A stretch of DNA of 34,342 nt from Octopus bimaculoides (GCF_001194135.2 NC_068984.1:56346736-56381077); one strand, 5' to 3'. Shown: positions 1 through 30,965, counted from the first letter of the stretch. Program-made: numbers and translations. The notes: generated from the letters alone by a model not told the origin.

Positions 1-397
1 TATTCAAAGAACGAGATTTAAAAACAATAGAGAGATGTTTAAAAAATTTCTCATTAAAAATAAATCGTAAAATTTCATTTTTTTTCCGAAATATTTTTTA
101 ACCATAGTTTTAAAATTCGGGCAGTCCGTATCTGGAATTTATTTCTGTTTATAATTTTAAAACAATTTTCAGACGGAAAGGTGATTTAAGGGAAATTTAG
201 ATGGTGTTTCTGGCACATCCCACGTCCACCTGCTAATTTCCTCATTTGTTTGTCATTCTGACATGTATTAATGTTTTTCAATATTTTTCTCCCCATAAAC
301 ACATTTTATGGAATGATGATACAGTGCAATTGCTGGGATTTAAGCAACAACAAAAAAAAAAGTTTATTTAAATTTTTAACCCCATCCCACATCAAAC

Positions 398-806
398 GAG
401 TCCAAGTGTGTGTGTGTGTACGAAAAAACCATATTTACCAACAGAAAAAGTATGCTATCAAAATAAATTATCTTTTACATACATTTTTTAAATCCTATGC
501 ATAGACACACACTGACAAACACATATACACGCACAGTAAGCAATGTACATTTTATAGAGTAAAAGCAACAACAGCAACAAAAATTGTTATTTAAATCTTT
601 AACCTTACCTCGCATCAGCAGAGTCCGTGTGTGTGTGTATGTAAGAAAAATCAATTACTAACAGAAAATTATGCTATTAAAATAAATTATTTACATCCCT
701 TTTTTAAAATCACTCTATCATCCTAATGAAATTCTTTTACATTTGCGTACACACATACTGACAAATACACATACTCACTCAGTGTGAGCAGTATACTTAT
801 ATAGAG
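398..806 (+). repeat. Degraded local tandem duplication (about 398-560 and 622-806)
   Basis: Both units read gagtcc-(TG)n-...aacagaaaa.tatgctat.aaaataaattat...actgacaaa.acacata...tatagag. Confidence 0.75.
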
Positions 807-1314
807 AGTTAGAAAGTTTACCAGGAGAAAATAAAAGAGATAGACAAATAGAGAGAGGGGGGGGGGGTAATCTTATGTGTTTCTGTCACAGATTTTGAAA
901 TTTTAAAATCAAGTGAAAATTTTCAAATTTGGTATATTGATGTACTTTTTTGCCCTGAACCCAAGTTTGTGGTTCATTTATTCAAGAAAACTTTTTTTAA
1001 ATGTTACAGTGGTATAAAGTTTGATCATTTTTACCTAATCAGAAAACAGGGTTTTTGCATAACAGCAGTAATAGGACAGATAATGGGAGGGCTGTCGATC
1101 TAAAAGTTGAGTTATTTATCATAGTAAATTATTTTTTTTTTTATTATTTACAGTTGACATTGTCTTTGGGATGCAGATTTCAAAATTCAAATTCATTTTT
1201 CTTGAGGATGCATTGTTTTAAAGCCTTTTGGGGCTAAACACACATACATAACCACATGCACTCACATTCATATAATAGATATGTACATAACATATATATA
1301 TATATATATATATA

Positions 1315-1776
1315 NNNNNNNNNNNNNNNNNNNNNNNNNNNNNNNNNNNNNNNNNNNNNNNNNNNNNNNNNNNNNNNNNNNNNNNNNNNNNNNNNNNNNN
1401 NNNNNNNNNNNNNNNNNNNNNNNNNNNNNNNNNNNNNNNNNNNNNNNNNNNNNNNNNNNNNNNNNNNNNNNNNNNNNNNNNNNNNNNNNNNNNNNNNNNN
1501 NNNNNNNNNNNNNNNNNNNNNNNNNNNNNNNNNNNNNNNNNNNNNNNNNNNNNNNNNNNNNNNNNNNNNNNNNNNNNNNNNNNNNNNNNNNNNNNNNNNN
1601 NNNNNNNNNNNNNNNNNNNNNNNNNNNNNNNNNNNNNNNNNNNNNNNNNNNNNNNNNNNNNNNNNNNNNNNNNNNNNNNNNNNNNNNNNNNNNNNNNNNN
1701 NNNNNNNNNNNNNNNNNNNNNNNNNNNNNNNNNNNNNNNNNNNNNNNNNNNNNNNNNNNNNNNNNNNNNNNNNNNN
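1315..1776. other. Assembly gap (N run)
   Basis: N run. Other gaps are at 4488-4842, 8885-8894 and 30524-30775. ORFs crossing these are artefacts. Confidence 0.99.
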
Positions 1777-1913
1777 TGTATGTATTATATAACAGATAAC
1801 AAAGAGAAGAGTGAAAATTTATTCACTTCCAAAATTTTTTTATTAAAATTTAGAAATCACCTTTAGAGAAGCTGAAGTGGAAAATATTAATGGAAGCTGC
1901 AAGGGACAGAGTC

Positions 1914-2279
1914 TGTCTGCTTAACTCTAATTGTAGGTATAAAAATATTATATATAGATGTAAGATTACTTCAAAGAATAGGGAGTACTTCTATATCAGA
2001 GCTAGCTCATGTTATATTAAGCAAAGAATTGCCAATCATTTAAATTCATTTAAATATAGATAAAAAATGAATACTATTAGTCTTAGGAAACTAATTTGAG
2101 CACTAAAAGATAGTAACAAAATATATTTGATTGCCTGAGAAATATTTAGTAAGGCAAAACCTTATAGAGTAGGTGATATTAGACATGACCTTTGTGTGGA
2201 AGAAATGTATCAAATTTTCACTACTAAGTTTACTCTTATAAACACTAAACAGGAAACGCTTGAGAAAACATGCATTTAA
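1914..2279 (+). mobile_element. Penelope-like retroelement GIY-YIG endonuclease remnant
   Basis: Hand translation with internal stops: CLLNSNCRYKNIIYRCKITSKNREYFYIRASSCYIKQRIANHLNSFKYR*KMNTISLRKLI*ALKDSNKIYLIA*EIFSKAKPYRVGDIRHDLCVEEMYQI...LINTKQETLEKTCI*. This follows the C-terminal GIY-YIG layout of Penelope elements. Confidence 0.85.
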
Positions 2280-3111
2280 ATGATTTAAATAAACACAACT
2301 TGCCATCTATAGTAACTATCCTAGTTACAGTAATGATTGTAATAATTAATGATATTTATACAAATAATGATAAGGCACACAGAGCTGCGCTCGGTAGTGA
2401 AATGAAAGCACGTTATAAAAATAAAACTACTGAATAATAATAATAATAATGTACTCCATATAGCAAAATGAAAACGAAACTACTACAATTAACTGAAATC
2501 TGAATAAACATTTTAAAACCACACTTCAACTGTAATACCAGTAGAGGTGATTATAAGACAAAAATTTGGATTTAAAAAGTAACACTATCACCTTCAACTG
2601 AATACCAATGCAGGATGCTTGTTTGAATCAGTCCACTTTGCAAACGTCGTGAATGATGACCTTTGATGAAATAGCAGCAAGTAGGGTGCATAATTGCATA
2701 CAGAGCAATTTGCAGTCAAAACATGTAGGTCAGTATTATATATGCTGCAGAAAACTTTTTAATAAAAGACGTTTTGGATGTGAATAAATCTCCATTCTCC
2801 TCTTCATTATCAATTATATACTCTACATAATATTTGCAGTTCTGAACAGGAACATAGAACTACCCAATGAGTGAGCTTACAAGTACCAGTATCTCTTTTA
2901 AGTTTGAGTACTATGTTACTGGACCAATGTGGATAGCCAGCATATACCAATTTGTGAGATAATATGGTATCCATCAGGATGCTTTATCCCTTTTATACTC
3001 TCTCTATATATATGCATGTATGTACTTGTATATGTATGCATGCAGGTTTTATATATATATATATATATATAGACAATGTGTACGTACGCCACTATATATA
3101 TATAAATAATA

Positions 3112-3378
3112 CAGAATGGGACAAAAACGCAAAACATCCAGACAGGTGATACAAGAAAGGGACAAAACATTCAGATGGACGATACAAAGAAAACAAGGAC
3201 AGGTCATTCGGAGTTCGAGAATAACCAGCTGAAATTGCAAGAATAATCTGGATCTCGACTGAGGAAAGAAAACTCCAAATGACCTGCCCTTTTTTTCTTT
3301 GTATTATCCATCTGGATGTTTTGTCCTTTTCTTGTATCACCTAACTGTCTGGATGTTTTGCACTCTTGTCCCATTCTG
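3112..3378. mobile_element. Foldback MITE with ~105-bp terminal inverted repeats, TA-flanked
   Basis: 3112-3215 is the reverse complement of 3271-3378 with a few substitutions and one small indel. The spacer is 55 bp and TA lies on both sides (Tc1/mariner-type target site). Confidence 0.85.
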
Positions 3379-3381
3379 TAT

Positions 3382-3390
<9 letters not shown>

Positions 3391-3469
<79 letters not shown>
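3391..3469. repeat. (TG)n microsatellite
   Basis: Pure dinucleotide run. Other TA, TG, CT and TATG tracts occur at about 8280-8440, 8895-8942, 10350-10555, 10856-10900, 11108-11155 and 16330-16452. Confidence 0.98.
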
Positions 3470-3472
<3 letters not shown>

Positions 3473-3849
3473 AGGCTTAAGCATTGCTGTGTGGTAAAGA
3501 AACTAGCTTCTTAATCACATGGTTCCAGGTTTGATCTTACTGTACAGCACCTTCAACAAATATTTTTTTGCAACCTTCAATTGACTAACACCTTGTAAGT
3601 GAAATTTGGTAGGCAGAAACTGTGTGTGTGTGTTTACGTTATTCTTTAAGTTGAGTTCCTTTATGTCCCATAAGTTACTGGTTCCATAACTAAAGATTGA
3701 GAAAAGAAGTAACCAGACTGAAATGAATGGGTCCAGTTATGAAGGATTGAAAATCTTGTAACTGGCATCCCCAATATATTTCATCTAACACTATTATTTC
3801 TGCCGGTCCACTGCCCTCTTTGTAATATTAGTAATAAATGAATACTTAC

Positions 3850-4103
3850 ATTGGGCAACAAAATTCCTCATCTAACTGCAAACTTCTTCGTCCTCTTTTA
3901 AAAACAGGATAATGATATTGATTCTGGATCCATTCCTTCTCAAAAATATTATTTAATTGCTCTTCTGTGTAGAACAAATTTGGATATCTATCCATAATAA
4001 ATGACCTCTTTTCTTCATATTCGCCCTTTACCAAAAGATATGTGGCCATGGTTATATGGGTAACTAGCATACTCAAGACTATCACCAAAATGCAAACGTT
4101 GAT
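3850..4103 (-). CDS. Coding exon 2 of an unrecognised secreted precursor (signal peptide core, propeptide, furin site, CCP)
   Basis: Polypyrimidine acceptor ttttttgtttctttttgacgtctaatttctag|, an open 254-nt frame, and donor AT|gtaagt. It translates to INVCILVIVLSMLVTHITMATYLLVKGEYEEKRSFIMDRYPNLFYTEEQLNNIFEKEWIQNQYHYPVFKRGRRSLQLDEEFCCP. Confidence 0.8.
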
Positions 4104-5799
4104 CTAGAAATTAGACGTCAAAAAGAAACAAAAAATTAATATTAATTACTTCCTTCTGAAAATGGTTACATAAATATATGGAAAATATGATTGGGATTGA
4201 ATACTGTTTATGCCTTTTTTCAAAACCATTTGCTTTACCATATTTTTAAATAATTTACTGCAGTGGGCGTATCGGTATTTGTTAGTGGATTCAGTTCACT
4301 TTAAGCAGTGGTTCCTAAGCTTGGAACATGGTGTAGATTTTGAAAAGATCAAGACAAAATGATTCATTTACATTTGAAATATTTAAGTTCTAAAATGTTT
4401 GTGAATATGTTATATAATAAACCACAGGCATAAGGGGTGCAGTATAATATTATTTCCAACAAAAACTGAGGAATATTTCTGCAAGGANNNNNNNNNNNNN
4501 NNNNNNNNNNNNNNNNNNNNNNNNNNNNNNNNNNNNNNNNNNNNNNNNNNNNNNNNNNNNNNNNNNNNNNNNNNNNNNNNNNNNNNNNNNNNNNNNNNNN
4601 NNNNNNNNNNNNNNNNNNNNNNNNNNNNNNNNNNNNNNNNNNNNNNNNNNNNNNNNNNNNNNNNNNNNNNNNNNNNNNNNNNNNNNNNNNNNNNNNNNNN
4701 NNNNNNNNNNNNNNNNNNNNNNNNNNNNNNNNNNNNNNNNNNNNNNNNNNNNNNNNNNNNNNNNNNNNNNNNNNNNNNNNNNNNNNNNNNNNNNNNNNNN
4801 NNNNNNNNNNNNNNNNNNNNNNNNNNNNNNNNNNNNNNNNNNATGTACGTATGTATGTATGTATGTATGCATGTATCAACATGTGTGTCTTTGTGTCTGT
4901 CCCTCACTATTGCTTGACAACCAGCATCAGTTTGTTTACATCCCTGGAACTTAACAATTCAGCAAAAAGAGACCAATAGAGAAAGTATCAAGCTTAAAAA
5001 AGTACTTGGGTTGGTTTATTTGACTAATCCCTTGAAGGTGGTGCCGACTGAAGTTAATATGACTGAAGTCCAATGACTAAAACTTGTAAAGCATAAAAAA
5101 TTGAAGATATTTTTTTAAGGGTTGTGGTTTTATAACTGATTATAAAGTAGTAATGATAAAAGGTTCATAGTCACTGATTTACAGCTTAGCATATGCTCAC
5201 CAACATGAACTACTCTTGATTCTGATTAATGTTCATGATCATTTCTTGTAGTTGTTGTTTAGCTCCAAGTCAATCCAGATGAAGATAATCTATGATTAAA
5301 GGCATCCCAACCATGTGCACTCCAGCAGAGGTGAAGCAAGAGTTCTCAGTCTCCATGGACAAAGACATTTTTGGGACTCCAACAGGCATGATGAGCCCAA
5401 GGAAATTTCAGGCTCATTACACCTCTACACACTTGTCCTAAGAGCAATACACCCTTCTCTTGCATCTCTGCATCCCAGTTTACATGCTGAGAGAAAGGAC
5501 ATTTCAAACTTTGCAGACATGGGACAACTATGGACATGTGTTTAGGTCTGTTTAACATTGTCAACAAAGTGCAGTCTAACTGATCCTCCGATCCTGTAGA
5601 TTGCATAATTAAAAAAAAAATAGTGGAAATAACTATTGGAAATAACTAATGACATGAATTTGGATAATTGAGTTAAAGTAACAGCCACAAGTATATGTTT
5701 TTGTCTGTTTGACCTAATCAGCTCAATATGGTCAAATCAAGCCAAAAGATCAGGGGATGAGATATTACATTAGAACAAGATAGGTATATTTTTCTTTAA

Positions 5800-6802
5800 G
5801 AATAAACTGTAGAGGGATGATATGTTTCAGATTGCAAAGTAGTGTATAGGAATCATAACATCGTTGATGGAAAATGTGTACATATTGATAAAGGTGCACT
5901 TGCTCTCACCAATGCAGAGAATAGATGTGGAAATTTTATTAAATTGGTTGCTGATTGAGGAAAATGCACATGGATGAAAGAGGGACTACTCCAAATAGAT
6001 CTACCCCAAATAGATTCAACAGATGGACTAGCTTTTGATTGTTACATGGTTGAAATGATGGTTAAGGTTATGTTGACCAAGAAAACAGTCAGACCACCAG
6101 TCATAGTCATTGTAGTACAGAAAATTTCCGGCAAAGTAGGTTATGCATGGTCACTCATATAGTTAACCAAATAGCCAACAAGAAGATGTTAGTTCTAATT
6201 TCTGGCATAACAGAATCAACTGCTATGAAGGCAAAGAAGATGATCTAGATAGAAGAAACTAGAGACATCAAAGTGATTAACCTAGTTATGAAAGTAACTC
6301 AAAAGTGTCATAGCACAACTAATAAGGAAGAAATTAGCTTAAAAGTGATGTAGTTCAGGTTGGGTTTATGTCAAAACACTTTACCACCGACGCTGTCTTC
6401 CTAGTGAGACAAGTTGCAGAAATTTCTTAGAAAGAACAAGCTACTAAAGCCAGTAATCTTACACCTAGGCCTTTTCCAGTCTGGTAGTTGCTAAAGAAAA
6501 TCTGATGTAGCTGAATGGATTGTGAGAGTTATGTAAGCTATGTAAGGAAATGCTGTCAGCAATTATTTCAGTGAGAAAATGAATAAGAGTCCATCTGGGA
6601 CTTGATTCTCAGTGCCATGCTATTTACTGTATATTCTGCTGGCCATAAAAGAGAAATTTAAGACTGGCCATCCATAGGAACTTCTGTATGCCTATGGTCT
6701 AGCTCTCATAGATGAATCTGTCAAAGAATTAATGAACAAATTCTAAATATGGATGCAAAGCCTAGAATCAAGATGTCTTAAAGTAAACCTAAGATAAATG
6801 TT
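5800..6802 (+). mobile_element. Degraded RTE-clade LINE reverse transcriptase fragment
   Basis: Frameshifted remnants of RT motifs: ...KISGKVGY..., ...TTDAVFLVRQ..., and IKEKFKTGHP*ELLYAYGLALIDESVKELMNKF*IWMQSLESRCLKVNL (decayed WELLYADD). The left boundary is approximate. Confidence 0.85.
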
Positions 6803-7213
6803 ATCATTTACATCTGAAGGCCTTTTCTGTAGACCTACCTGTGATCCCACTGCATGCCTTGTGCATCCATAGTTTACATTAAGTATACTGAATGATTGCC
6901 CTCTTTTGCATAGTAACCATGGCTACTTTTCAGACAGCATAGTCTTTATTAGCAAAAACGTTTGTCTTTGCTAGGTTTACTTTAAGACATCTTGATTCTA
7001 GGCTTTGCATCCATATTTAGAACTTGTTCATTAATTCTTCGACAGATTCATCTATGAGAGCTAGGCCATAGGCATACAGAAGTTCCTACGAATAGCTAGT
7101 CTTAAATTTCTCTTTTATGGCCTGCCAAATATACAGTAAATAACATGGCACTGAGAATCAAGTCCCAGATAAACTCCTACTTATTCATTTTCTCACTGAA
7201 ATAATTGCTGACA
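6803..7213 (-). mobile_element. Inverted second segment of the same RTE LINE
   Basis: About 6957-7213 is the reverse complement of about 6554-6802. 6803-6956 continues the LINE ORF on the minus strand (...CKLWMHKACSGITGR...). Confidence 0.85.
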
Positions 7214-8280
7214 AGTGGACTAAGGAGTTGCAGATCAGGTTCTTATACTTGAAAGGTCATACGCCAAAAGAGACTTTCGATGAGGTGAAAGAAGTTTATG
7301 GTGGCAATGCACCATCATGCAACGTAGTCAAGCACTGGCATCACCAGTTCAGATGTGGTTGGACACCAGTGAAAACTGCTCCTATTCCTGGATGGTCACA
7401 TTCCACCATTGATGAAGATACCATCCATAAACTATTCGCCAACTAGCCCAAGAAGTGAAGATGAGTGTACAGTCCATGGAAAAAATCATTCGCGACCATT
7501 TGCACATGTGGAAGTTGTCTGCATGATGGATTCCCCAGATGCTCACACCTTTTCAGATGCAGGAATGAGTCACTTGCTCTCAGACTTTTTTGGAATGTGC
7601 CAAGAAAATGAGGAGGACTTTTTCAGCAGACTTATCACACGGGATGAAACATAAGTCCATCACTATGATCCTGAGACTAAAATCCAGTTGAAGCAATGGA
7701 AGCATGATAACTCACCACCTCCAATGAAAGCTTGTGTCCAACCTTCAGCAGGCAAGGTGATGCTCGCAGTCTTTTGGAACCAGCATGGAGTAGTGATGAT
7801 GGATTTTCTGGCAAACCACAATTAACAGGACATATTATGCTTCTCTGTTGCAGAAATTATGGGACACCGTCAAAGCAGAAAGGCATGGCATGCTAACCAA
7901 ATGAGTCTACCTCCTCCAAGACAACACCCTAGTTCACAATATGCATGTTGCCCAAATGAAAGCACACCCCTGCAGTTATGAATTCCTTCCTCATCCCCCT
8001 TACTCTCCTGACCTCACACCATCTGACTTCCACCTCTTTCCAATCATGAAGCCTTTTTTGAAGGAGAAGCACTTTTCAAATGATGATGAACTTATTTTTA
8101 CGGTAAAGTCTTGGCTCTAGACGCAACCTACTGACTTCTACAGACAAGGTCTTCACAGCTGCATAAAGTGATGGGAGAAGTATGTCATCTATGTAGAGAA
8201 GGATTAATAATTATGTCAAGTTTTGTTTATCCCAGTCCTTGAGAAGTGGATCAGGGGAAATTTTTAATGAACAGCCCTCG
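7214..8280 (+). mobile_element. 5'-truncated mariner (DD34D) transposon, inactivated transposase
   Basis: HTH region IRFLYLKGHTPKETFDEVKEVYG, WIPQML (WVPHEL-like), RLITRDET, LLQDN, then exactly 34 residues to the D of YSPDLTPSDFHLF. It carries frameshifts and stops. The 3' TIR ...gaacagccctcg is followed by TA. Confidence 0.93.
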
Positions 8281-8482
8281 TATATACATATATATAGTAT
8301 ATATATATATATATATATATATAGATACATATATATTATATATGCATATATACATGTATATATACATACATATATACATATGTACATGTGTGTGTGTATG
8401 CATGCATGTGTGCGTGCCTGTGTGCATGCATGTGTGTGTGTATACTGCAGAGTTGATTAAATGTGAATAATATATCACTTAC

Positions 8483-8491
8483 TTTCAGCAT
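8483..8491 (-). CDS. Probable coding part of exon 1 (ATG CTG AAA) of the secreted precursor gene
   Basis: The sequence gacaacATGctgaaa|gtaagt has A at -3 and a full-consensus donor. It is phase 0, matching the 4103 acceptor, and gives MLK+INVCILVIVLSMLVTHITMA, a textbook signal peptide with a basic n-region. Confidence 0.65.
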
Positions 8492-8894
8492 GTTGTCCAA
8501 AATAAGAATGGTGCAGCTGTAGTACGATGCCAATTTAGCTCCTCAGCATATCACAAACTACTCCAATGAAAAATGTTTGAGTAGTTATATAATAGGTGAA
8601 AAGTGTAAGTACAAATTTATAACTCAGTGACTGCTAGACAAGAGTGTTTGCAAATCCTGTAATTAAACATACAAGTTGACAGCCACACTCAAAATCACTT
8701 GCTTCAAATAAGAAATCTGGTAAGACTTGTATCATTCAAATTGCCAGGAACAGTGATACAAAAAAAAAAAAAACACGAAGTAAAAAATAAATAATAGTTC
8801 TTATTTATAGTTTACAAATCAGCTGAGAACTTTTGCATATTCTCTTCCTTTTCACTCCCTCTTTCCCTACCCCTTCTCTCTTGGNNNNNNNNNN

Positions 8895-12295: not shown

Positions 12296-13143
12296 ACTGA
12301 AGTACAGCTCCCAAAATTACTGCAGAGCTTAATGACCACCTTGAGAACCCAGTTTCCACAAAAACTGTTCACCAGGAGCTGCACAAAGCCGGATTTCATG
12401 GGAGGGATGCAATCAGAAAACCTCTACTTTCTGAAACAAATATTGCAAAGTGTTTAGAGTGGAGTAAAAACCTACAGAATTGGTCCCTAGAGCAGCGGAA
12501 GAATGTTTTCTTGGACGAGTCATCTTTTACCTTATTTCTGACTACTGGCCGAGTATACGTGTGGAGACAGCCAAAAGAAGCATTTGATCCAGACTGCCTT
12601 CTTTCATCTGTTAAACATGGAGGAGAATCTGCGATGATCTGGGGGGGCTATATCTTGGAAATCCGTTGGCCCAATGGTTTCCCTTTATGGCAGAATTAAT
12701 AGAGAAATCTATTTAAGCATTTTACCTGGTCAAATTCATCCTATAGTTGCACAACTGTTTCTAGAGGGAATCACAATCTTTCAGGATGATAATGCACTAA
12801 TTCACACAGCTAAAGTTGTTACTGAATGGCACGAGAAACTTTCTAGTGAAGTTGGACATTTTATCTGGCCACCACAGTCCTCAGATCTCCGTATTATTGA
12901 ACATTTATGGTGCATTTTAGAAAAACAAGTAAGGAGTCAATATCCTCCACCATCATCACTACAAGAACTGGAAACTGTTTTAGCTGAAGTATGGTCAAAA
13001 ATTCCTTTGCAAACAATTCAAACTTCATGAGTCCATACCTCATAGAATTCAAGCTGTAATTAGTGCCAAAGGCAGTCCTACCCAATATTAAAATAAATTT
13101 GTTTGAAATTTTAAGGTGTTACCATTATTTTGTCCAACCCCTG
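12296..13143 (+). mobile_element. 5'-truncated Tc1-type transposon, inactivated DD36E transposase
   Basis: Motifs TAPKITAELN...VSTKTV, DESSF, VKHGGESAMIWG, FQDDNALIH...WPPQSSDLRIIEHLW, and IQAVISAKG. It has frameshifts. The 3' TIR ...ttttgtccaacccctg is followed by TA. Confidence 0.93.
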
Positions 13144-14115
13144 TATAAAACAAACGAAGGAAAAAACGATTCCTTCAAGAGTTGTAAAACATCCAAATCA
13201 TTAGTATATATCATTATATTCATAGCTAAATATTAATTATAAATTTTAAGTAAGCTATCTTTATTATACTCAATGATTATACATTTATAAATAGATTTAA
13301 TTTATTAATTAATGATAATAATAATAAATGAATAATTTTATATAATGCCATATTGTAATCAAAAACATTTATTTCCAAGTACGTATTTCCAGCTTTTTTT
13401 ATATAGGTAATTTATTTATAAATATATAAATTTTGACTTACAAAGATATATTTTTTCCTCTGATAAACTAAGTAATTTGGTATTTATTCAAGGAATAATG
13501 TTTATGCAAATATGAATAAGTAGATTACAACAATTATTATATATATATAATAATTATATGTATTTATTGTGATACAAACTAAGTTTAATAATTTTTATAA
13601 TATTGTGTACTTTAGAGCTTGTATACATATTGCAATACTTTAGTAAAGACTTAGTGAAATTTAGAAATTTAGAAAGACTTAGTGAAATTTAGATATATAT
13701 TTATCATTTATAGTTTATTATCTCTTTATCTAAGAAATAATATAGGTTATAATAATCGTAGATCTATGTTATGTTTATTTTATTTACGGAGTTCTCCCTT
13801 CGATAAACTACATAAATAAGGACCATTATTTGTTAGTTACTTTGAATAATCTTTATATCAATAAAAATAAATAAATGAGAGGAGCTATTACATATTATCA
13901 TTATATATATAATTTATATGTATTTTCTTTGAGTAATTGTAAATATATGAAAAGTAGCACATATAAATAAATAAATAGTTGATATAGTAGAAATACATTA
14001 TTTCAAACATGTATAGGCATATTTATAGAATAAATATTGATTTACATGATTTAACCATCTCTAAAATTAAGTAAAACTCTGATACTTTATTTATCTATAT
14101 ATTATTATTATATAT

Positions 14116-14259
14116 GGCGTTAGGAAGGGCATCCAGCTGTAGAAACTCTGCCAAATTAGATTGGAGCCTGGTGTTGCCATCCGGTTTCACCAGTCCTCAG
14201 TCAAATCGTCCAACCCATGCTAGCATGGAAAGCGGACGTTAAACGATGATGATGATGAT
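14116..14259 (+). mobile_element. Family-A SINE, 5'-truncated young copy
   Basis: ggcgttaggaagggcatcc...ggacgttaaacgatgatgatgat; near-identical to 28120-28241. Confidence 0.9.
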
Positions 14260-14751
14260 ATATCATTAGAATGGCCAGTGATTATTTTCGATTTAAATAC
14301 ATTTAGATTAATATTATTGGAGACACATAATAACATTTTTTTACTGTTGTAAATTTTTGTTACTTAATTATTTTATCCATTTGAATTTTGTTGTTTTTTT
14401 ATTGTACTTATTATGTATTTGAACTATTAATGCTCACACTCCTAAACATAGGTATTTTGAATCAGTATTTTGCAATCTGGCAGTCTTTTTACATGGAATT
14501 TCATCTGTCTTTTTGAAGCAAGGCCCTGAAGAGATTTGTATACATAGATATGAATTGTTTATGAATCGAACAATGTATATAAGTTGAAGCAAATTGTTTA
14601 TAAATCAAACAATGTACATGAGTTGAAACAAATTTTGGCTTTATTTGTTTGTTTTTTTAAATTGGTTGTTATATTATATTTTATAATGTATTATATTATA
14701 ATGTAAATAAATTGTTAGATTGTCAATTGTATTTCTCTATTTATCATATAT

Positions 14752-19400: not shown

Positions 19401-19548
19401 AATTTAAATGAAATACACAATATATTGGAATAAAATATAAATCCACAAATTTATTATAAATAAACTACATTATGTGAGTACTGTATTTCAATATCATTTT
19501 CTTTCAGATCAACAGAATAGTTGTTTATATTTTGGTCAAAAGAATAGC

Positions 19549-19756
19549 CATAACCGCCTGACTGGCCTTTGTGCTGGTGGTACGTAAAAGCACCCACTAC
19601 ACTCTCTGAGTGGTTGGTGTTAGGAAGGGCATCCAGCTGTAGAAACTCTGCCAAATCAGATTGCAGAATGGTGTAGCCATCTGGTTCACCAGTCCTCAGT
19701 CAAACCGTCCAACCCATGCTAGCATGGAAAGCAGACGTTAAACGACGATGATGATA
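19549..19756 (+). mobile_element. Family-A SINE
   Basis: Single internal repeat core, standard body and (GAT)n tail. Confidence 0.9.
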
Positions 19757-25692: not shown

Positions 25693-25775
25693 TTAAAAAA
25701 CTTACTCTTTAATTATATTATTTAGATTTTAACGTTGAAGTAATTAAAAATATATGAAAAAGACTTAAAACTCAC

Positions 25776-27217
25776 CTAAACTGCATGAGACTGGGAGCAA
25801 CACAGTGTAATTTATCACATAAACCATCTCCAACATAATACAGTGGAACATCAGACAGTTCTTCACATGCAACTGAAAGCATTCCCATAATTCGTTCTTT
25901 AGTATTTACATGATAGTTGTTTGCTTCAACTGCAGAGAGAACTTGTTTTAGGAAGTCTTTATTATGTATTGACTCAGCCCAAATAGGACCGCCAACATTA
26001 TGCTTATGTCCACAATGCAAACAAGTCTGCCCAACAGGTGGGCCTTGTGCAGGAGTGTATTTGAAGTTGTTACCTTTCGTGGGTATTTTCTCACCTAATC
26101 GCTGAAGACTAAATGTTCCACAGCCAACACAATGGTAAACCATAGCCAATTTACTTACCGACTGCTTCACTTTTCCCTGGCCCTTAAAAACTCGCACAAA
26201 AACACGTACATAAAAATCGGCACTAATGGAAACAAGTGGTTCAATATAGCGAGAATAACAATTAGCATGTGTCTCAATAGCCTGAAGTATAATCCGCAGA
26301 GCCATCTCATGGCAATACTCACTACGTAGAGACATTGCTCGGTACTTTGAGAAACAGGTCTCACCAGCATTCCCACATAAAACAGCTGTATCAGTACAGG
26401 TCACACATAAAAGGCCACCTGCAGATACAGCTTGTACTGCACCATCTAAAAATCGTGCAGGGCTACCATATGGATCAAGATCAATAACATCAAAGCCTTG
26501 CTTATATTCACGGTTTTCATACATAAACATTGATGCATCTCCACAATTGGCTTTCATAAGGTTACTAACACCATTCTTCTCAATGTTCATTTTTATAAAG
26601 TCAACTGCATTCTCATCAAAATCGTTTGCAATGATTTCCTTCACACCTGGAACTTCAAGGCTAAATCGAACAGATCGCAACCCAGAAGCAGCAAGTCCTT
26701 CTAAAATACGCACCCCATTAGCATAGACTTTTCCAGCTTCAAGAGGTTGTTCCACTTTTTGAGTTTCTTCCTTAGCAATAACATTATCACTGTCGCAACA
26801 AACAGGTGGTTTTATCTGTTTTGTGGATGTAGATAAGCTTTCATTAATTAGAATACTTTTATCATGAACTATATCATTCTTGTTACAATTGTTGCTGTCA
26901 CTGTTCTCTTCCAATGCTGCAATCCGCTTCAAGTGCAAAGGGTCATTGATGAAATTTTTGGTAAATTCCGAAATAATAACAACAGTTAAATCTCGATTAA
27001 ATTCTTGCACTGGATTGTAGAACACAGATTTGGGTAAATAAACTTCAGCTTTGCCTTCCTGTATAGTGCAAACATCTTGCACAGGAAGTTTGGAAACATC
27101 TGCAGTTTGTATATGTTCAGTACTATCACACATTTTGTGCTTTTGGCATACAAGAAGGAAGTTTCTAAAAGAAGATTGTCTTTCGTTTAAGCACTGTAAT
27201 ATTCTCCTGAAATACAT
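25776..27217 (-). CDS. TRMT1: TRMT1 first coding exon (tRNA guanine26-N2-dimethyltransferase: N-terminus and nearly all of the catalytic domain)
   Basis: The 481-aa ORF has hallmark Trm1 motifs: VFYNPVQEFNRDL, ILEGLAASGLRSVRF, IANDFD, DVIDLDPYGSP, GGLLCVTCTD, HEMALRI, IEPLVSISADFYVRVFVRV, the Cys4 zinc site YHCVGC...CLHCGH, and GGPIW. The acceptor ttttctcttttgcag is at 27240-27226, an in-frame TAA lies directly before ATG 27217, and the donor AG|gtgag follows 25776 (phase 2). Confidence 0.97.
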
Positions 27218-27600: not shown

Positions 27601-28119
27601 TGTAGTGCATTTAAATTCAATGCATCCTCTTTTTTTCCTCTTAGAAGGTAAAGTATGGCTTGAGGGAAATTTGGCTGCTATTTCTAACAGGTTGTGTAAC
27701 CACATGGAGGCTCTTTTATGCACAGTACTTTATTACATGATAGAACAATTGTAGTTAAGCTTACAGTCTGGTTTTATGAGAGAACCATTGAGTTAAATAA
27801 ATACTTTAAATGGAGCTGTCAAGAGCAGAGATGTTTCAGGAGTATTTATCAGATAAAATATAACAAAACAACACATAATGAGGAGACATAATTGGAGGAC
27901 ATAACAGATTTAAGGTTAAAAAATCTACCCAGCTATTGGGTATATTGTAACAACTTCTCAGTGCCAAGCTCATACTTAATAACTATAGAAAAATCATTGT
28001 ACAAAACCTCTTCATTCATATTATATGCGAGTTAGAGACTTGCAACCAGCTTGTTTGTACAAGTGAGTGCTGTCAATCAAAAGGCCAGCATACTGGATAC
28101 TAGTAGATTTCAGGGGTCA

Positions 28120-28241
28120 CTCTGCCAAATTAGATTGGAGCCTGGTGTTGCCATCCGGTTTCACCAGTCCTCAGTCAAATCGTCCAACCCATGCTAGCAT
28201 GGAAGGCGGACGTTAAACGATGATGATGATGATGATGATGA
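28120..28241 (+). mobile_element. Family-A SINE, 5'-truncated young copy
   Basis: One mismatch to 14146-14259 over the shared body; longer (GAT)n tail. Confidence 0.9.
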
Positions 28242-30409: not shown

Positions 30410-30965
30410 AAACGCCCGTTTTCGGCTACAGAGAATACAAATCTGCAAAACAAATCGGCATTTTGAAATTACCCTCCCCCACTAAATTCTTCATTTTACA
30501 CTTATTTCAGAAATTTTTTTTTTNNNNNNNNNNNNNNNNNNNNNNNNNNNNNNNNNNNNNNNNNNNNNNNNNNNNNNNNNNNNNNNNNNNNNNNNNNNNN
30601 NNNNNNNNNNNNNNNNNNNNNNNNNNNNNNNNNNNNNNNNNNNNNNNNNNNNNNNNNNNNNNNNNNNNNNNNNNNNNNNNNNNNNNNNNNNNNNNNNNNN
30701 NNNNNNNNNNNNNNNNNNNNNNNNNNNNNNNNNNNNNNNNNNNNNNNNNNNNNNNNNNNNNNNNNNNNNNNNNNNCAGATTATGATTCTGAAAAAAATTT
30801 CCAAAAATTTTTGTAGCTAGGGTTAGGGTTTGCCGACTTTTGGCAATTCCCGGAATCTCCATATCCGAAAAGGTGGTTGGGGTAAGGGAGAGGGGGAAGA
30901 AATTTCAAAATGCCGATTTGGGACAATTTTCCGGAACCTCTGTATCCGAAAACGGGGGTTTTTGG
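30410..30965. repeat. Inverted-repeat element spanning the assembly gap
   Basis: 30410-30480 (ccgttttcggctacagag...caaatcggcattttgaaatt) matches the reverse complement of about 30895-30965. TAGGGTTAGGGTT is at about 30817-30829. Confidence 0.65.

What the first reader, a model, noticed from the sequence alone, without database searches (positions are those of the whole stretch)
3850..8491. Unrecognised secreted prepro-protein gene (signal peptide, furin site, CCP) hidden from the ORF track
Seen in sequence: splicing ATG CTG AAA|gtaagt (8491-8483) to the ag|ATC acceptor at 4103 gives MLKINVCILVIVLSMLVTHITMATYLLVKGEYEEKRSFIMDRYPNLFYTEEQLNNIFEKEWIQNQYHYPVFKRGRRSLQLDEEFCCP(I/M), with canonical sites and matching phases. 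Established: R-G-R-R fits the furin consensus R-X-K/R-R, and EEKR is a second dibasic site. Inference: the mature product starts SLQLDEEFCCP. A CCP motif just after a furin site is what I would expect in lophotrochozoan cystine-knot (Spaetzle/neurotrophin-like) cytokines, but a disulfide-rich neuropeptide, pheromone or salivary toxin is also possible. I do not recognise it as a named gene, so it is the best candidate here for an undescribed signalling molecule.
Basis: partly seen in the sequence, partly recalled or inferred. Interest (0 to 1): 0.8.

Follow-up and report, generated by a model that had tools for sequence, protein, structure and literature searches.

The report
Octopus Spätzle-like cytokine gene, 5' exons

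Summary
ATG CTG AAA|GTAAGT (8491-8483, minus strand) joins AG|ATC at 4103, and that exon ends at 3850 before GTAAGT.

The 88-residue product is identical to UniProt A0A0L8FP53. It is also the first 88 residues of RefSeq XP_052823040.1, which is Octopus bimaculoides LOC106877899 isoform X2 (168 aa).

The assembly gap (4488-4842) lies inside intron 1. In O. vulgaris the equivalent 500 bp is microsatellite plus a SINE-like repeat.

The rest of the protein is encoded by two exons about 46.7 kb downstream, outside the window. After the RGRR site they complete a 92-residue domain with seven cysteines and a C-terminal C-x-C.

Pfam Spaetzle is the only family hit, and it is sub-threshold (20 bits against a cutoff of 27; E=0.0011). 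The two longest cysteine spacings equal those of Drosophila Spätzle C-106. Pairwise, profile-profile and structure tests did not reach significance.

A second isoform (X1, named "Spaetzle domain-containing protein" in UniProt) uses a paralogous 5' exon that lacks a furin site.

Orthologues exist in O. vulgaris and O. sinensis. dN/dS is about 1, but the exons contain no indels. No paper cites the gene.

It is a new, divergent member of a known kind, of modest interest.

The parts
8616..8621 (-). Candidate TATA box (TATAAA), 125-130 nt upstream of the start codon, for the isoform-X2 promoter.
   Evidence: Read. It is conserved in O. vulgaris within a 200-nt upstream block that is 95.8% identical. 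Promoter function is inferred, not shown.
8483..8491 (-). Coding part of exon 1: ATG CTG AAA (Met-Leu-Lys), followed by the donor GTAAGT at 8482-8477.
   Evidence: The O. vulgaris orthologue has ATG TTG AAA|gtaagt, a synonymous change. The same start is used in the RefSeq, UniProt and O. vulgaris/O. sinensis models.
4104..8482 (-). Intron 1 (4379 nt as assembled). It contains the assembly gap at 4488-4842 and a degraded mariner element.
   Evidence: The mariner remnant at 7228-7446 (+) matches HTH_48. The gap-equivalent region in O. vulgaris is 500 bp of repeats.
3850..4103 (-). Exon 2 (254 nt, residues 4-87 plus two bases of codon 88). It encodes the rest of the signal peptide (to Ala23, 4044), the pro-region (Thr24-Arg76, 4043-3885) and the first 11 residues of the putative mature ligand (from 3884). 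The pro-region includes EEKR at 4016-4005 and RGRR at 3896-3885. The mature part, SLQLDEEFCCP, carries the first two cysteines.
   Evidence: The exon is 100% identical to XP_052823040.1 residues 4-88 by tblastn. It is 94.1% identical at the nucleotide level to O. vulgaris, with no indel.
3844..3849 (-). Phase-2 splice donor GTAAGT of intron 2. Read-through gives ATG TAA, the false stop of the 88-aa model.
   Evidence: The donor is identical in O. vulgaris.
1..3849 (-). Start of intron 2. The intron is about 46.7 kb and runs out of the window. Exons 3 and 4, which encode the rest of the cystine-knot domain, lie at CM046604.1 56303913-56303799 and 56302864-56302736 (window p = record 56346735+p).
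   Evidence: No plausible in-phase cysteine-rich exon exists in 1-3848. The exons were located in L001 at 61314-61428 and 62363-62491.

Best explanation
Identity of the region. Window 8491-3850 (minus strand) holds the promoter-proximal first two coding exons of isoform X2 of Octopus bimaculoides LOC106877899 (XP_052823040.1, 168 aa).

The encoded pre-pro-protein, in order:
- A signal peptide (about residues 1-23, MLKINVCILVIVLSMLVTHITMA).
- A pro-region of about 53 residues, bounded by a dibasic site (EEKR) and a furin-type site (RGRR; RERR in the sister species).
- A 92-residue C-terminal domain with seven cysteines, two conserved N-glycosylation sequons and a C-terminal C-x-C.

Proposed mechanism (inferred):
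- The protein enters the secretory pathway and folds as a disulfide-linked cystine-knot dimer.
- A proprotein convertase cuts it after Arg76.
- The released knot dimer acts as an extracellular ligand of the Spätzle/neurotrophin superfamily, most plausibly for a Toll-type (LRR) receptor.

Second isoform. A second promoter and 5' exon, 26 kb downstream and outside the window, attaches a paralogous signal/pro segment to the same knot exons. That segment has no furin consensus. The two isoforms probably differ in where they are made and how they are activated.

What is shown: exon structure, database identity, orthologues, conserved splice sites and cysteines, and the weak Spaetzle profile match.

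What is inferred: secretion, cleavage, the dimeric knot, the receptor and the biological role.
For: Gene identity and structure:
- The spliced peptide equals A0A0L8FP53 and residues 1-88 of XP_052823040.1.
- The window is 100% identical to GCA_001194135.2 CM046604.1. All four exons join in frame with canonical AG/GT sites.
- The O. vulgaris and O. sinensis orthologues are 168 aa with the same architecture and conserved splice sites.

Coding constraint:
- There are no indels in 498 exon nt, against 7.4 expected from the flanks (P about 6e-4).
- All seven cysteines, both NxT sequons and the RxRR site are conserved.

Signal peptide. The hydrophobic core has a maximum Kyte-Doolittle(11) of 3.33, with TMA|T at the -3/-1 positions.

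Similarity to Spaetzle:
- Pfam Spaetzle PF16077 is the only coherent family hit for all four octopus proteins. The mature domain scores E=0.0011 and 20 bits over profile positions 14-94 of 96.
- Ten cysteine-fixed shuffles gave no Spaetzle hit.
- Cysteine framework: octopus is C10-36-C47-5-C53-2-C56-30-C87-1-C89. Drosophila Spz C-106 is C10-36-C47-6-C54-13-C68-30-C99-1-C101.
- MAFFT aligns F8, C10, I32, Q40, C47, C56, L65, P84, C87 and C89 as invariant columns.
- The low-confidence AlphaFold model is all-beta with one long hairpin. Every listed Foldseek match is a cystine-knot growth factor (VEGF/PlGF, IL-17, NT-3, Spätzle 3E07, gremlin, VWF CTCK).

Isoforms and literature:
- Isoform X1 shares exons 3-4 and has a weakly similar 5' exon (BLASTP E=7e-5). 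That exon is intact in O. vulgaris too.
- Spz-family ligands and neurotrophins share the layout of signal peptide, cleavable pro-domain and Cys knot (PMC2772990; PMC13617978).
Against: Weak family evidence:
- The Spaetzle hit is below Pfam's gathering score (14.8-20 bits against 27).
- Shuffled controls produced unrelated hits at E=0.014 and E=0.096, so E-values in the range of the full-length proteins' hits (0.008-0.044) arise by chance.
- BLASTP against Spz C-106 gives E=0.076.
- hhalign against a three-sequence Spz profile gives probability 0.8% and E=0.066.
- A small Spz HMM scores the octopus domain at only 2.2-2.8 bits (p about 0.02-0.03 against shuffles).
- Global alignment z-scores are 1.5 and -0.1.
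- No PDB sequence hit was found.

Weak structural evidence:
- AlphaFold confidence is poor (pLDDT 43 and 53). The second model's alignment contained Spätzle, which biases it. All Foldseek E-values exceed 0.2.

Selection and expression:
- dN/dS between O. bimaculoides and O. vulgaris is about 1.07 overall and 1.38 in the knot domain. Exons are no more conserved in substitutions than introns. Strong purifying selection is therefore not shown.
- No transcript or peptide evidence could be reached.

Differences from Spz. The seventh cysteine sits next to Cys I, not next to Cys V as in Spz1/Spz2, and loop III-IV is 2 residues instead of 13.
Confidence: 0.7

Rival explanations
1. It is a cystine-knot ligand, but of another branch of the superfamily: a true neurotrophin (Trk/p75 ligand), a Trunk/PTTH-type Torso ligand, or an IL-17. 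Octopus and other molluscs carry expanded IL-17 families. The weak Spaetzle hit would then reflect only shared knot features.
For: - Foldseek lists IL-17A, NT-3 and VEGF with scores as good as or better than Spätzle.
- A furin-type RxRR site directly before the knot is the neurotrophin mode of activation. Spz1 itself is cut by a clip-domain protease (established knowledge).
- Trunk is reported in molluscs (PMC6425005), and molluscs have many IL-17s (PMC11087794).
- A 2009 survey recovered neurotrophin-like genes but no Spz genes from lophotrochozoans (PMC2772990).
Against: - At E<=10, Pfam gave no hit to NGF, IL17, PDGF, TGF_beta or any other knot family. Only Spaetzle was hit, in all four proteins.
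- The Cys I-II and IV-V spacings (36 and 30) equal those of Spz C-106. NGF's are 42 and 27 (established knowledge).
- The domain has a full six-cysteine knot plus one extra cysteine, whereas the IL-17 knot uses four cysteines (established knowledge).
Confidence: 0.15
2. The gene is mainly a prohormone. The conserved 36-residue peptide between the two basic sites (SFIMDRYPNLFYTEEQLNNIFEKEWIQNQYHYPVFK) would be a bioactive product, alone or alongside the knot domain.
For: - That segment has 3 changes in 36 residues between O. bimaculoides and O. vulgaris, against 13 in 92 for the knot domain.
- The flanking EEKR and RxRR sites are conserved in three species.
- The motif (R/K)YP(N/G)(L/I)F(Y/H)T and the dibasic-Ser start recur in the paralogous X1 exon.
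Against: - No similarity to any known neuropeptide family was found. Pfam and PDB searches of the 88 aa were empty, and phmmer against 1.84 billion proteins found only the orthologue.
- Conserved pro-domains are normal in neurotrophins and Spätzle, where they assist folding and keep the ligand latent (established knowledge).
- There is no amidation signal (no Gly before the basic site).
Confidence: 0.08
3. It is a fast-evolving, Octopus-restricted secreted effector, such as a venom or salivary component, a pheromone or a reproductive protein. It would use a knot-like disulfide scaffold without acting as an endogenous cytokine.
For: - dN/dS is about 1-1.4, with substitutions clustered in the loop between Cys II and IV and around one glycosylation site.
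- No homologue outside Octopus was found with the searches available.
Against: - The knot domain was searched only with the word-indexed tool, so absence outside Octopus is not established.
- It is a single-copy gene with no tandem paralogue in the window, unlike typical toxin families.
- No tissue expression data were available either way.
Confidence: 0.05
4. The isoform-X2 5' exons are a prediction artefact or a decaying gene. The open frame would be fortuitous and would evolve neutrally.
For: - dN/dS is about 1, and exon substitution levels equal those of the introns.
- No transcript contig was found.
- Open runs of 85 codons are expected by chance in this window (own estimate from the base composition, not a tool run).
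Against: - The frame is intact, with identical splice sites and no indels, in O. vulgaris (P about 6e-4), and O. sinensis encodes an intact 168-aa orthologue.
- The signal peptide, basic sites and both cysteines are conserved.
- The exon joins exons 3-4 in phase.
- Independent annotation pipelines give the same model.
Confidence: 0.02

Closest known systems
Drosophila Spätzle (Spz-1; C-106 cystine-knot ligand of Toll; PDB 3E07, 4BV4; Pfam PF16077)
   Same: - Both have a signal peptide, a cleavable pro-domain and a C-terminal domain of about 100 residues ending in C-x-C a few residues before the stop.
- Both have six knot cysteines plus a seventh.
- Cys I lies 10 residues after the cleavage site in both.
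- The I-II and IV-V spacings are identical (36 and 30).
- Shared F8, I32, Q40, L65 and P84 are seen in the MAFFT alignment.
- Both genes make several isoforms that differ in the pro-region; for spz, see the spliced isoforms 11.5 and 11.32.
   Different: - Identity is only about 20%, and no significant pairwise or profile-profile score was obtained.
- The activation site is furin-type RxRR, not the clip-protease site VSSR|VGG.
- The extra cysteine is next to Cys I, not Cys V.
- Loop III-IV is 2 residues, not 13.
- The octopus isoforms arise from alternative promoters and 5' exons that also replace the signal peptide and the first 11 mature residues.
[quoted passage not shown]
   Same: These are Spz-family knots that are 'naturally cleaved and secreted' without an extracellular protease cascade (PMC13617978). 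A furin-type site predicts the same behaviour for isoform X2. They act as neurotrophic ligands of Toll receptors.
   Different: The octopus protein is much shorter (168 aa) than DNT-1 or DNT-2.
Vertebrate and lophotrochozoan neurotrophins (NGF family, Pfam PF00243)
   Same: Both have the pre-pro architecture, with a furin RxxR site immediately before a six-cysteine knot of roughly 100-120 residues that ends in C-x-C. Both belong to the same superfamily as Spz (PMC2772990).
   Different: No NGF profile hit was found at E<=10. The cysteine spacings differ: NGF is 42-9-11-27-1 (established knowledge) and octopus is 36-5-2-30-1.
Interleukin-17 family (Pfam PF06083), expanded in molluscs
   Same: Both are small secreted beta-hairpin knot-like cytokines with a C-x-C near the C-terminus. 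IL-17A is among the Foldseek matches.
   Different: No IL17 profile hit was found. IL-17 lacks a furin-cleaved pro-domain and uses only four knot cysteines (established knowledge).

Membership tests
Spätzle family (Pfam PF16077) | Profile match at or above the curated gathering score (27 bits) | tested here: not met
   - Scores were 14.8 bits (O. vulgaris), 17.1 (X2), 17.2 (X1) and 20.0 (mature domain alone, E=0.0011, profile positions 14-94 of 96).
- It is the only coherent family hit, and ten Cys-fixed shuffles did not reproduce it.
- It stays sub-threshold, so I describe the protein as Spätzle-like and do not file it as a proven member.
Spätzle family (Pfam PF16077) | Six knot cysteines in the Spz arrangement plus one extra cysteine, with C-x-C at the C-terminus | tested here: met
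   Octopus has C10, C47, C53, C56, C87 and C89 plus C9. Spz C-106 has C10, C47, C54, C68, C99 and C101 plus C98. Spacings I-II (36) and IV-V (30) are identical. The extra cysteine is placed differently: next to Cys I rather than Cys V (compare PMC2772990).
Spätzle family (Pfam PF16077) | Signal peptide, then a pro-domain removed by cleavage after Arg just before the knot domain | tested here: inconclusive
   The sequence features are present and conserved in three species. These are an n/h/c signal region with TMA|T, and RGRR/RERR eight residues before the first cysteine. SignalP and ProP were not available, and cleavage itself is untested.
Spätzle family (Pfam PF16077) | Cystine-knot fold and disulfide-linked homodimer | tested here: inconclusive
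   AlphaFold pLDDT was 42.8 (full length) and 53.1 (mature domain, with Spz in the alignment). Every listed Foldseek match is a cystine-knot growth factor, including 3E07, but all have E>0.2 and TM<=0.5.
Spätzle family (Pfam PF16077) | Binds and activates a Toll receptor | not testable with these tools
   This needs binding or reporter assays. Cephalopods do have a small TLR repertoire (PMC10279657).
Neurotrophins (NGF family, PF00243) | Profile match to NGF and the NGF cysteine spacing | tested here: not met
   No NGF hit was found at E<=10, and no neurotrophin chain was found in the PDB sequence searches. The spacing differs from NGF (established knowledge).
Interleukin-17 (PF06083) | Profile match to IL17 | tested here: not met
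   No IL17 hit was found at E<=10 for any of the four proteins or for the mature domain.
Trunk/PTTH (Torso ligands) | Sequence similarity to Trunk/PTTH knot domains | not tested
The Pfam scan returned nothing of that kind.
Neuropeptide / peptide prohormones | Similarity to a known peptide family, or repeated peptides flanked by dibasic sites with amidation signals | tested here: not met
   Pfam, PDB and phmmer searches of residues 1-88 found only the orthologue. There is a single pro-peptide and no Gly-Lys/Arg amidation motif.

The most novel reading that the evidence does not exclude
One octopus gene may use two promoters with paralogous 5' exons to put the same cystine-knot ligand under two activation regimes. 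Isoform X2 (this window) would be a furin-cleaved, constitutively mature, neurotrophin-style form. Isoform X1, without a furin site, would be a latent form that an extracellular protease must activate, as with Spätzle. On this reading the gene is a genuine Spz-type ligand in a lophotrochozoan. A 2009 survey found no Spz genes in that clade. It could also be the long-sought 'NGF-like' factor of the octopus nervous system or immune system.
Probability: 0.15. Interest if true: 0.6.

Novelty: new member of a known kind. Interest (0 to 1): 0.3.

Why it matters
Spätzle and neurotrophin-type ligands link Toll and Trk signalling to immunity, development and neuronal plasticity. Their history outside arthropods and deuterostomes is poorly resolved. 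One genome survey recovered neurotrophin-like genes but no Spz genes from lophotrochozoans (PMC2772990). Whether octopus has an NGF-like factor was asked experimentally, but the work was never published (PMC8814914).

If this gene is a true Spz-type ligand, it would be a concrete candidate for testing against cephalopod Toll receptors and in the octopus nervous system. Its two-promoter, two-pro-domain design would be a neat case of regulating ligand activation by choice of 5' exon.

The gene model is already public, the family evidence is weak, and the protein evolves fast. For now this is a well-founded annotation and a lead, not a discovery.

Tried and rejected
- Next exon inside the window. 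Every AG acceptor downstream of 3849 was translated in the correct phase. No cysteine-rich continuation was found. The real exons are about 46.7 kb away.
- Terminal-exon reading, in which the protein ends at CCPM* as in A0A0L8FP53. I rejected it. The first poly(A) signal is more than 1 kb downstream, and three species' models splice onward.
- Paralogues in the window. tblastn found none.
- Direct identification of residues 1-88. Pfam and PDB searches were empty. phmmer against 1.84 billion representatives found only the O. vulgaris orthologue. This used the only sensitive-search job on the least informative half of the protein. With hindsight, the knot domain should have been the query.
- The last word-indexed search, with a mixed octopus and Spz profile, returned only Drosophila spz isoforms, one ENA fragment and the octopus proteins.
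- Statistical support from individual Spz sequences. BLASTP, hhalign, a small Spz HMM with 3000 shuffles, and global alignment with 2000 shuffles were all non-significant.
- Structure. Two AlphaFold runs gave low confidence. The Foldseek results suggest the superfamily only.
- Transcript evidence through exact-protein look-ups. Only the genome assemblies carry these proteins. O. sinensis DNA was not delivered.
- A possible relic of exon 4 at L001 39499-39552, which would have suggested a fused tandem duplicate. It has no acceptor, stops at once and lies in a dispersed repeat, so I rejected it.
- Literature. No paper cites the locus or accession numbers. The term-pair search 'spatzle' + 'octopus' found only a historical essay and an unrelated review.

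Full report
**1. The observation**

On the minus strand the window reads ttggacaacATGCTGAAA|gtaagt at 8491-8483. It reads tttctag|ATCAACGTT... from 4103, open to ...TTTTGTTGCCCAAT|gtaagt. Exon 2 is therefore 4103-3850, with the donor at 3849-3844.

The joined translation is MLKINVCILVIVLSMLVTHITMATYLLVKGEYEEKRSFIMDRYPNLFYTEEQLNNIFEKEWIQNQYHYPVFKRGRRSLQLDEEFCCP, followed by a split codon AT|N. RGRR is residues 73-76 (3896-3885) and EEKR is residues 33-36 (4016-4005).

Reading through the phase-2 GTAAGT donor gives ATG TAA. This explains the 80-aa ORF at 3846-4088 in the mechanical ORF list, so the exon was not wholly invisible.

**2. The gap**

The window has four N runs. The one at 4488-4842 lies inside intron 1 (8482-4104), 385 bases upstream of the acceptor, so no reading frame crosses it. 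The chromosome-level assembly still carries the same 355 N.

In the gap-free O. vulgaris locus, the sequences flanking the gap are collinear: window 4850 corresponds to L002 14175 and window 4487 to L002 14676. The 500 bp between them is (TA)n, (CAT)n, a SINE-like element also found elsewhere in the window, and (TGTA)n. It has stops in all three frames of the gene's strand. The gap most likely hides repeats, not an exon.

**3. What the exons belong to**

- The 88-residue peptide is 100% identical to UniRef A0A0L8FP53, an 'uncharacterized protein' of Octopus bimaculoides.
- phmmer against 1.84 billion representative proteins found one relative. It is 168 aa and 86% identical over residues 1-88. 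It is O. vulgaris CAI9721673.1.
- Searching with that protein found O. bimaculoides XP_052823040.1 (LOC106877899 isoform X2, 168 aa).
- The same search found isoform X1 (XP_014782433.1, 175 aa; UniProt A0A0L8GC44, 'Spaetzle domain-containing protein').
- O. sinensis has XP_029634877.1.

The window is 100% identical to GCA_001194135.2 CM046604.1, where window position p equals record position 56346735+p.

The gene spans 52.5 kb:

| Part | Position |
|---|---|
| Exon 1 CDS | window 8491-8483 |
| Exon 2 | window 4103-3850 |
| Exon 3 | L001 61314-61428 |
| Exon 4 | L001 62363-62491 |

- Exons 3 and 4 lie about 46.7 kb beyond exon 2 and outside the window.
- All junctions are canonical and in phase (9+254+115+129 = 507 nt).
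- The first base of exon 3 is G, which makes residue 88 Met. In O. vulgaris it is A, which gives Ile.

Isoform X1 starts at a different 5' exon (L001 40696-40979). That exon ends at the same place and in the same phase (CCQ|V).

**4. Is it a real coding gene?**

Between O. bimaculoides and O. vulgaris, the start codon context, both splice sites of exon 2 and those of exons 3-4 are conserved.

The exons carry no indel in 498 nt. Their flanks carry 27 indel events in 1812 nt, which predicts 7.4 events in the exons (P about 6e-4). All seven cysteines, two NxT sequons and the basic sites are conserved.

Against this, substitutions are as frequent in the exons (5.9-8.7%) as in the flanking introns (5.6-6.9%). 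dN/dS is about 1.07 overall and 1.38 in the knot domain, although the counts are small. The changes cluster in the Cys II-IV loop and around one glycosylation site, while blocks of 11-24 residues are invariant.

I read this as a real, fast-evolving secreted protein. Purifying selection is shown only through the maintained frame, cysteines and splice sites. No transcript evidence could be reached with these tools.

**5. What the protein is**

After RGRR the product is 92 residues: SLQLDEEFCCPMTPSFQMLDALQNLDGLERPIIHFEDAYQVIPWVTCSGTGFCTECESRNRTISLLAWKNSTSLIPTFDLFSVPLYCTCIPG.

Evidence for a Spätzle-like domain:
- Pfam gives one coherent hit, Spaetzle (PF16077). The scores are 14.8-17.2 bits for the full proteins and 20.0 bits (E=0.0011) for the mature domain over profile positions 14-94 of 96. 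All are below the 27-bit gathering score.
- Ten shuffles that kept the cysteines in place gave no Spaetzle hit. They did give unrelated hits at E=0.014 and E=0.096, which shows how weak this range of E-values is.
- I confirmed the Drosophila Spz C-106 sequence against PDB 3E07 and 4BV4 and compared frameworks. Octopus is C10-36-C47-5-C53-2-C56-30-C87-1-C89 with an extra C9. Spz is C10-36-C47-6-C54-13-C68-30-C99-1-C101 with an extra C98.
- MAFFT makes F8, C10, I32, Q40, C47, C56, L65, P84, C87 and C89 invariant columns.

Evidence that fell short:
- BLASTP gives E=0.076.
- hhalign gives probability 0.8%.
- A small Spz HMM gives 2.2-2.8 bits (p about 0.02-0.03).
- Global alignment gives z=1.5 and z=-0.1.
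- The PDB sequence searches were empty.
- AlphaFold gave pLDDT 42.8 for the full length and 53.1 for the mature domain, the latter with Spz in the alignment. The second model is all-beta with a long hairpin. Every listed Foldseek match is a cystine-knot growth factor (VEGF, IL-17A, NT-3, Spätzle 3E07, gremlin, VWF CTCK), but none has E<0.2.

Conclusion: a cystine-knot cytokine of the Spätzle/neurotrophin superfamily is the best reading, and Spätzle is the closest named family. Formal membership is not demonstrated.

**6. How it probably works (inference)**

- The hydrophobic N-terminus (Kyte-Doolittle maximum 3.33, TMA|T) directs secretion.
- The pro-region, bounded by EEKR and RxRR, is more conserved than the knot: 3 changes in 36 residues against 13 in 92.
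- The pro-region's core motif recurs in the X1 exon (BLASTP E=7e-5). This fits a folding or latency role, as in proNGF and pro-Spätzle.
- R-G-R-R|S fits the furin consensus R-X-K/R-R. It predicts intracellular maturation, as with neurotrophins and with the Drosophila DNT-2 and DNT-3 ligands that are 'naturally cleaved and secreted' (PMC13617978).
- The odd seventh cysteine (C85 or C86) is a candidate for the interchain disulfide.
- Isoform X1 has ...EYEKKSCCQ in O. bimaculoides and ...KPKGNNYCCQ in O. vulgaris. It has no furin consensus, so it may be secreted latent or cut by another protease.
- The receptor is unknown. Cephalopods keep a small TLR set (PMC10279657).

**7. Comparison with what is known, and novelty**

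Spz proteins and neurotrophins are paralogous families of one superfamily. A 2009 survey found neurotrophin-like genes but no Spz genes in lophotrochozoan genomes, and it cautioned that the sampling was thin (PMC2772990).

The octopus gene is already in RefSeq and UniProt as an uncharacterised prediction. I found no paper that cites it. I also found no study of an octopus Spätzle in the term-pair search 'spatzle' + 'octopus'. An unpublished search for an NGF-like factor in octopus is recorded in PMC8814914.

I therefore rate it a new, divergent member of a known kind. The word 'unrecognised' holds for function and literature, but not for gene catalogues.

**8. Limits**

The knot domain was searched only through the word-indexed tool. 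'Octopus-only' is therefore not established.

SignalP, ProP, RNA-seq and the AlphaFold DB were not available.

Noticed in passing
window 25772-27217 (-): An uninterrupted 481-aa ORF matches Pfam TRM (N2,N2-dimethylguanosine tRNA methyltransferase) at E=8e-120, covering profile positions 11-341 of 376. It is a TRMT1-like gene, or a large single exon or retrocopy of one. It lies upstream of the Spz-like gene on the same strand.
   Followed up: partly
window 7228-7446 (+), probably extending to about 8120 (+); and 12674-13030 (+): These are degraded mariner/Tc1-type transposase remnants. An HTH_48 (Mos1) match (E=1e-7) lies inside intron 1 of the gene. An unconfirmed ORF at 7941-8120 looks like a mariner C-terminus by eye but had no Pfam hit. 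A DDE_3 match (E=1e-7) lies further upstream.
   Followed up: partly
window 14115-14263, 19544-19755, 28119-28241; also L002 14211-14400: A SINE-like dispersed repeat of about 120-210 bp occurs in several copies in the window and in the O. bimaculoides and O. vulgaris loci. One copy sits in the O. vulgaris sequence that corresponds to the assembly gap at 4488-4842.
   Followed up: partly
L001 40696-40979 (outside the window); L002 64615-64893: This is the alternative 5' coding exon of isoform X1. It is weakly paralogous to the exon in this finding and is intact in O. vulgaris. It is only 61% identical between species, with in-frame indels, so it evolves much faster than the X2 exon (87%). The O. 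vulgaris annotation has no X1-type model.
   Followed up: partly
window 3885-4004 (-), residues 37-76: The pro-peptide between the two basic sites is better conserved between octopus species than the presumed mature ligand (3 changes in 36 residues against 13 in 92). Overall dN/dS is about 1. It is not known whether this reflects a second bioactive peptide or a chaperone-like pro-domain.
   Followed up: partly
window 1315-1776, 8885-8894, 30524-30775: There are three further assembly gaps. The two that fall within the stretch matched to the locus from the chromosome-level assembly (1315-1776 and 8885-8894) are kept there at identical lengths, and both are flanked by microsatellite-rich sequence.
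   Followed up: no
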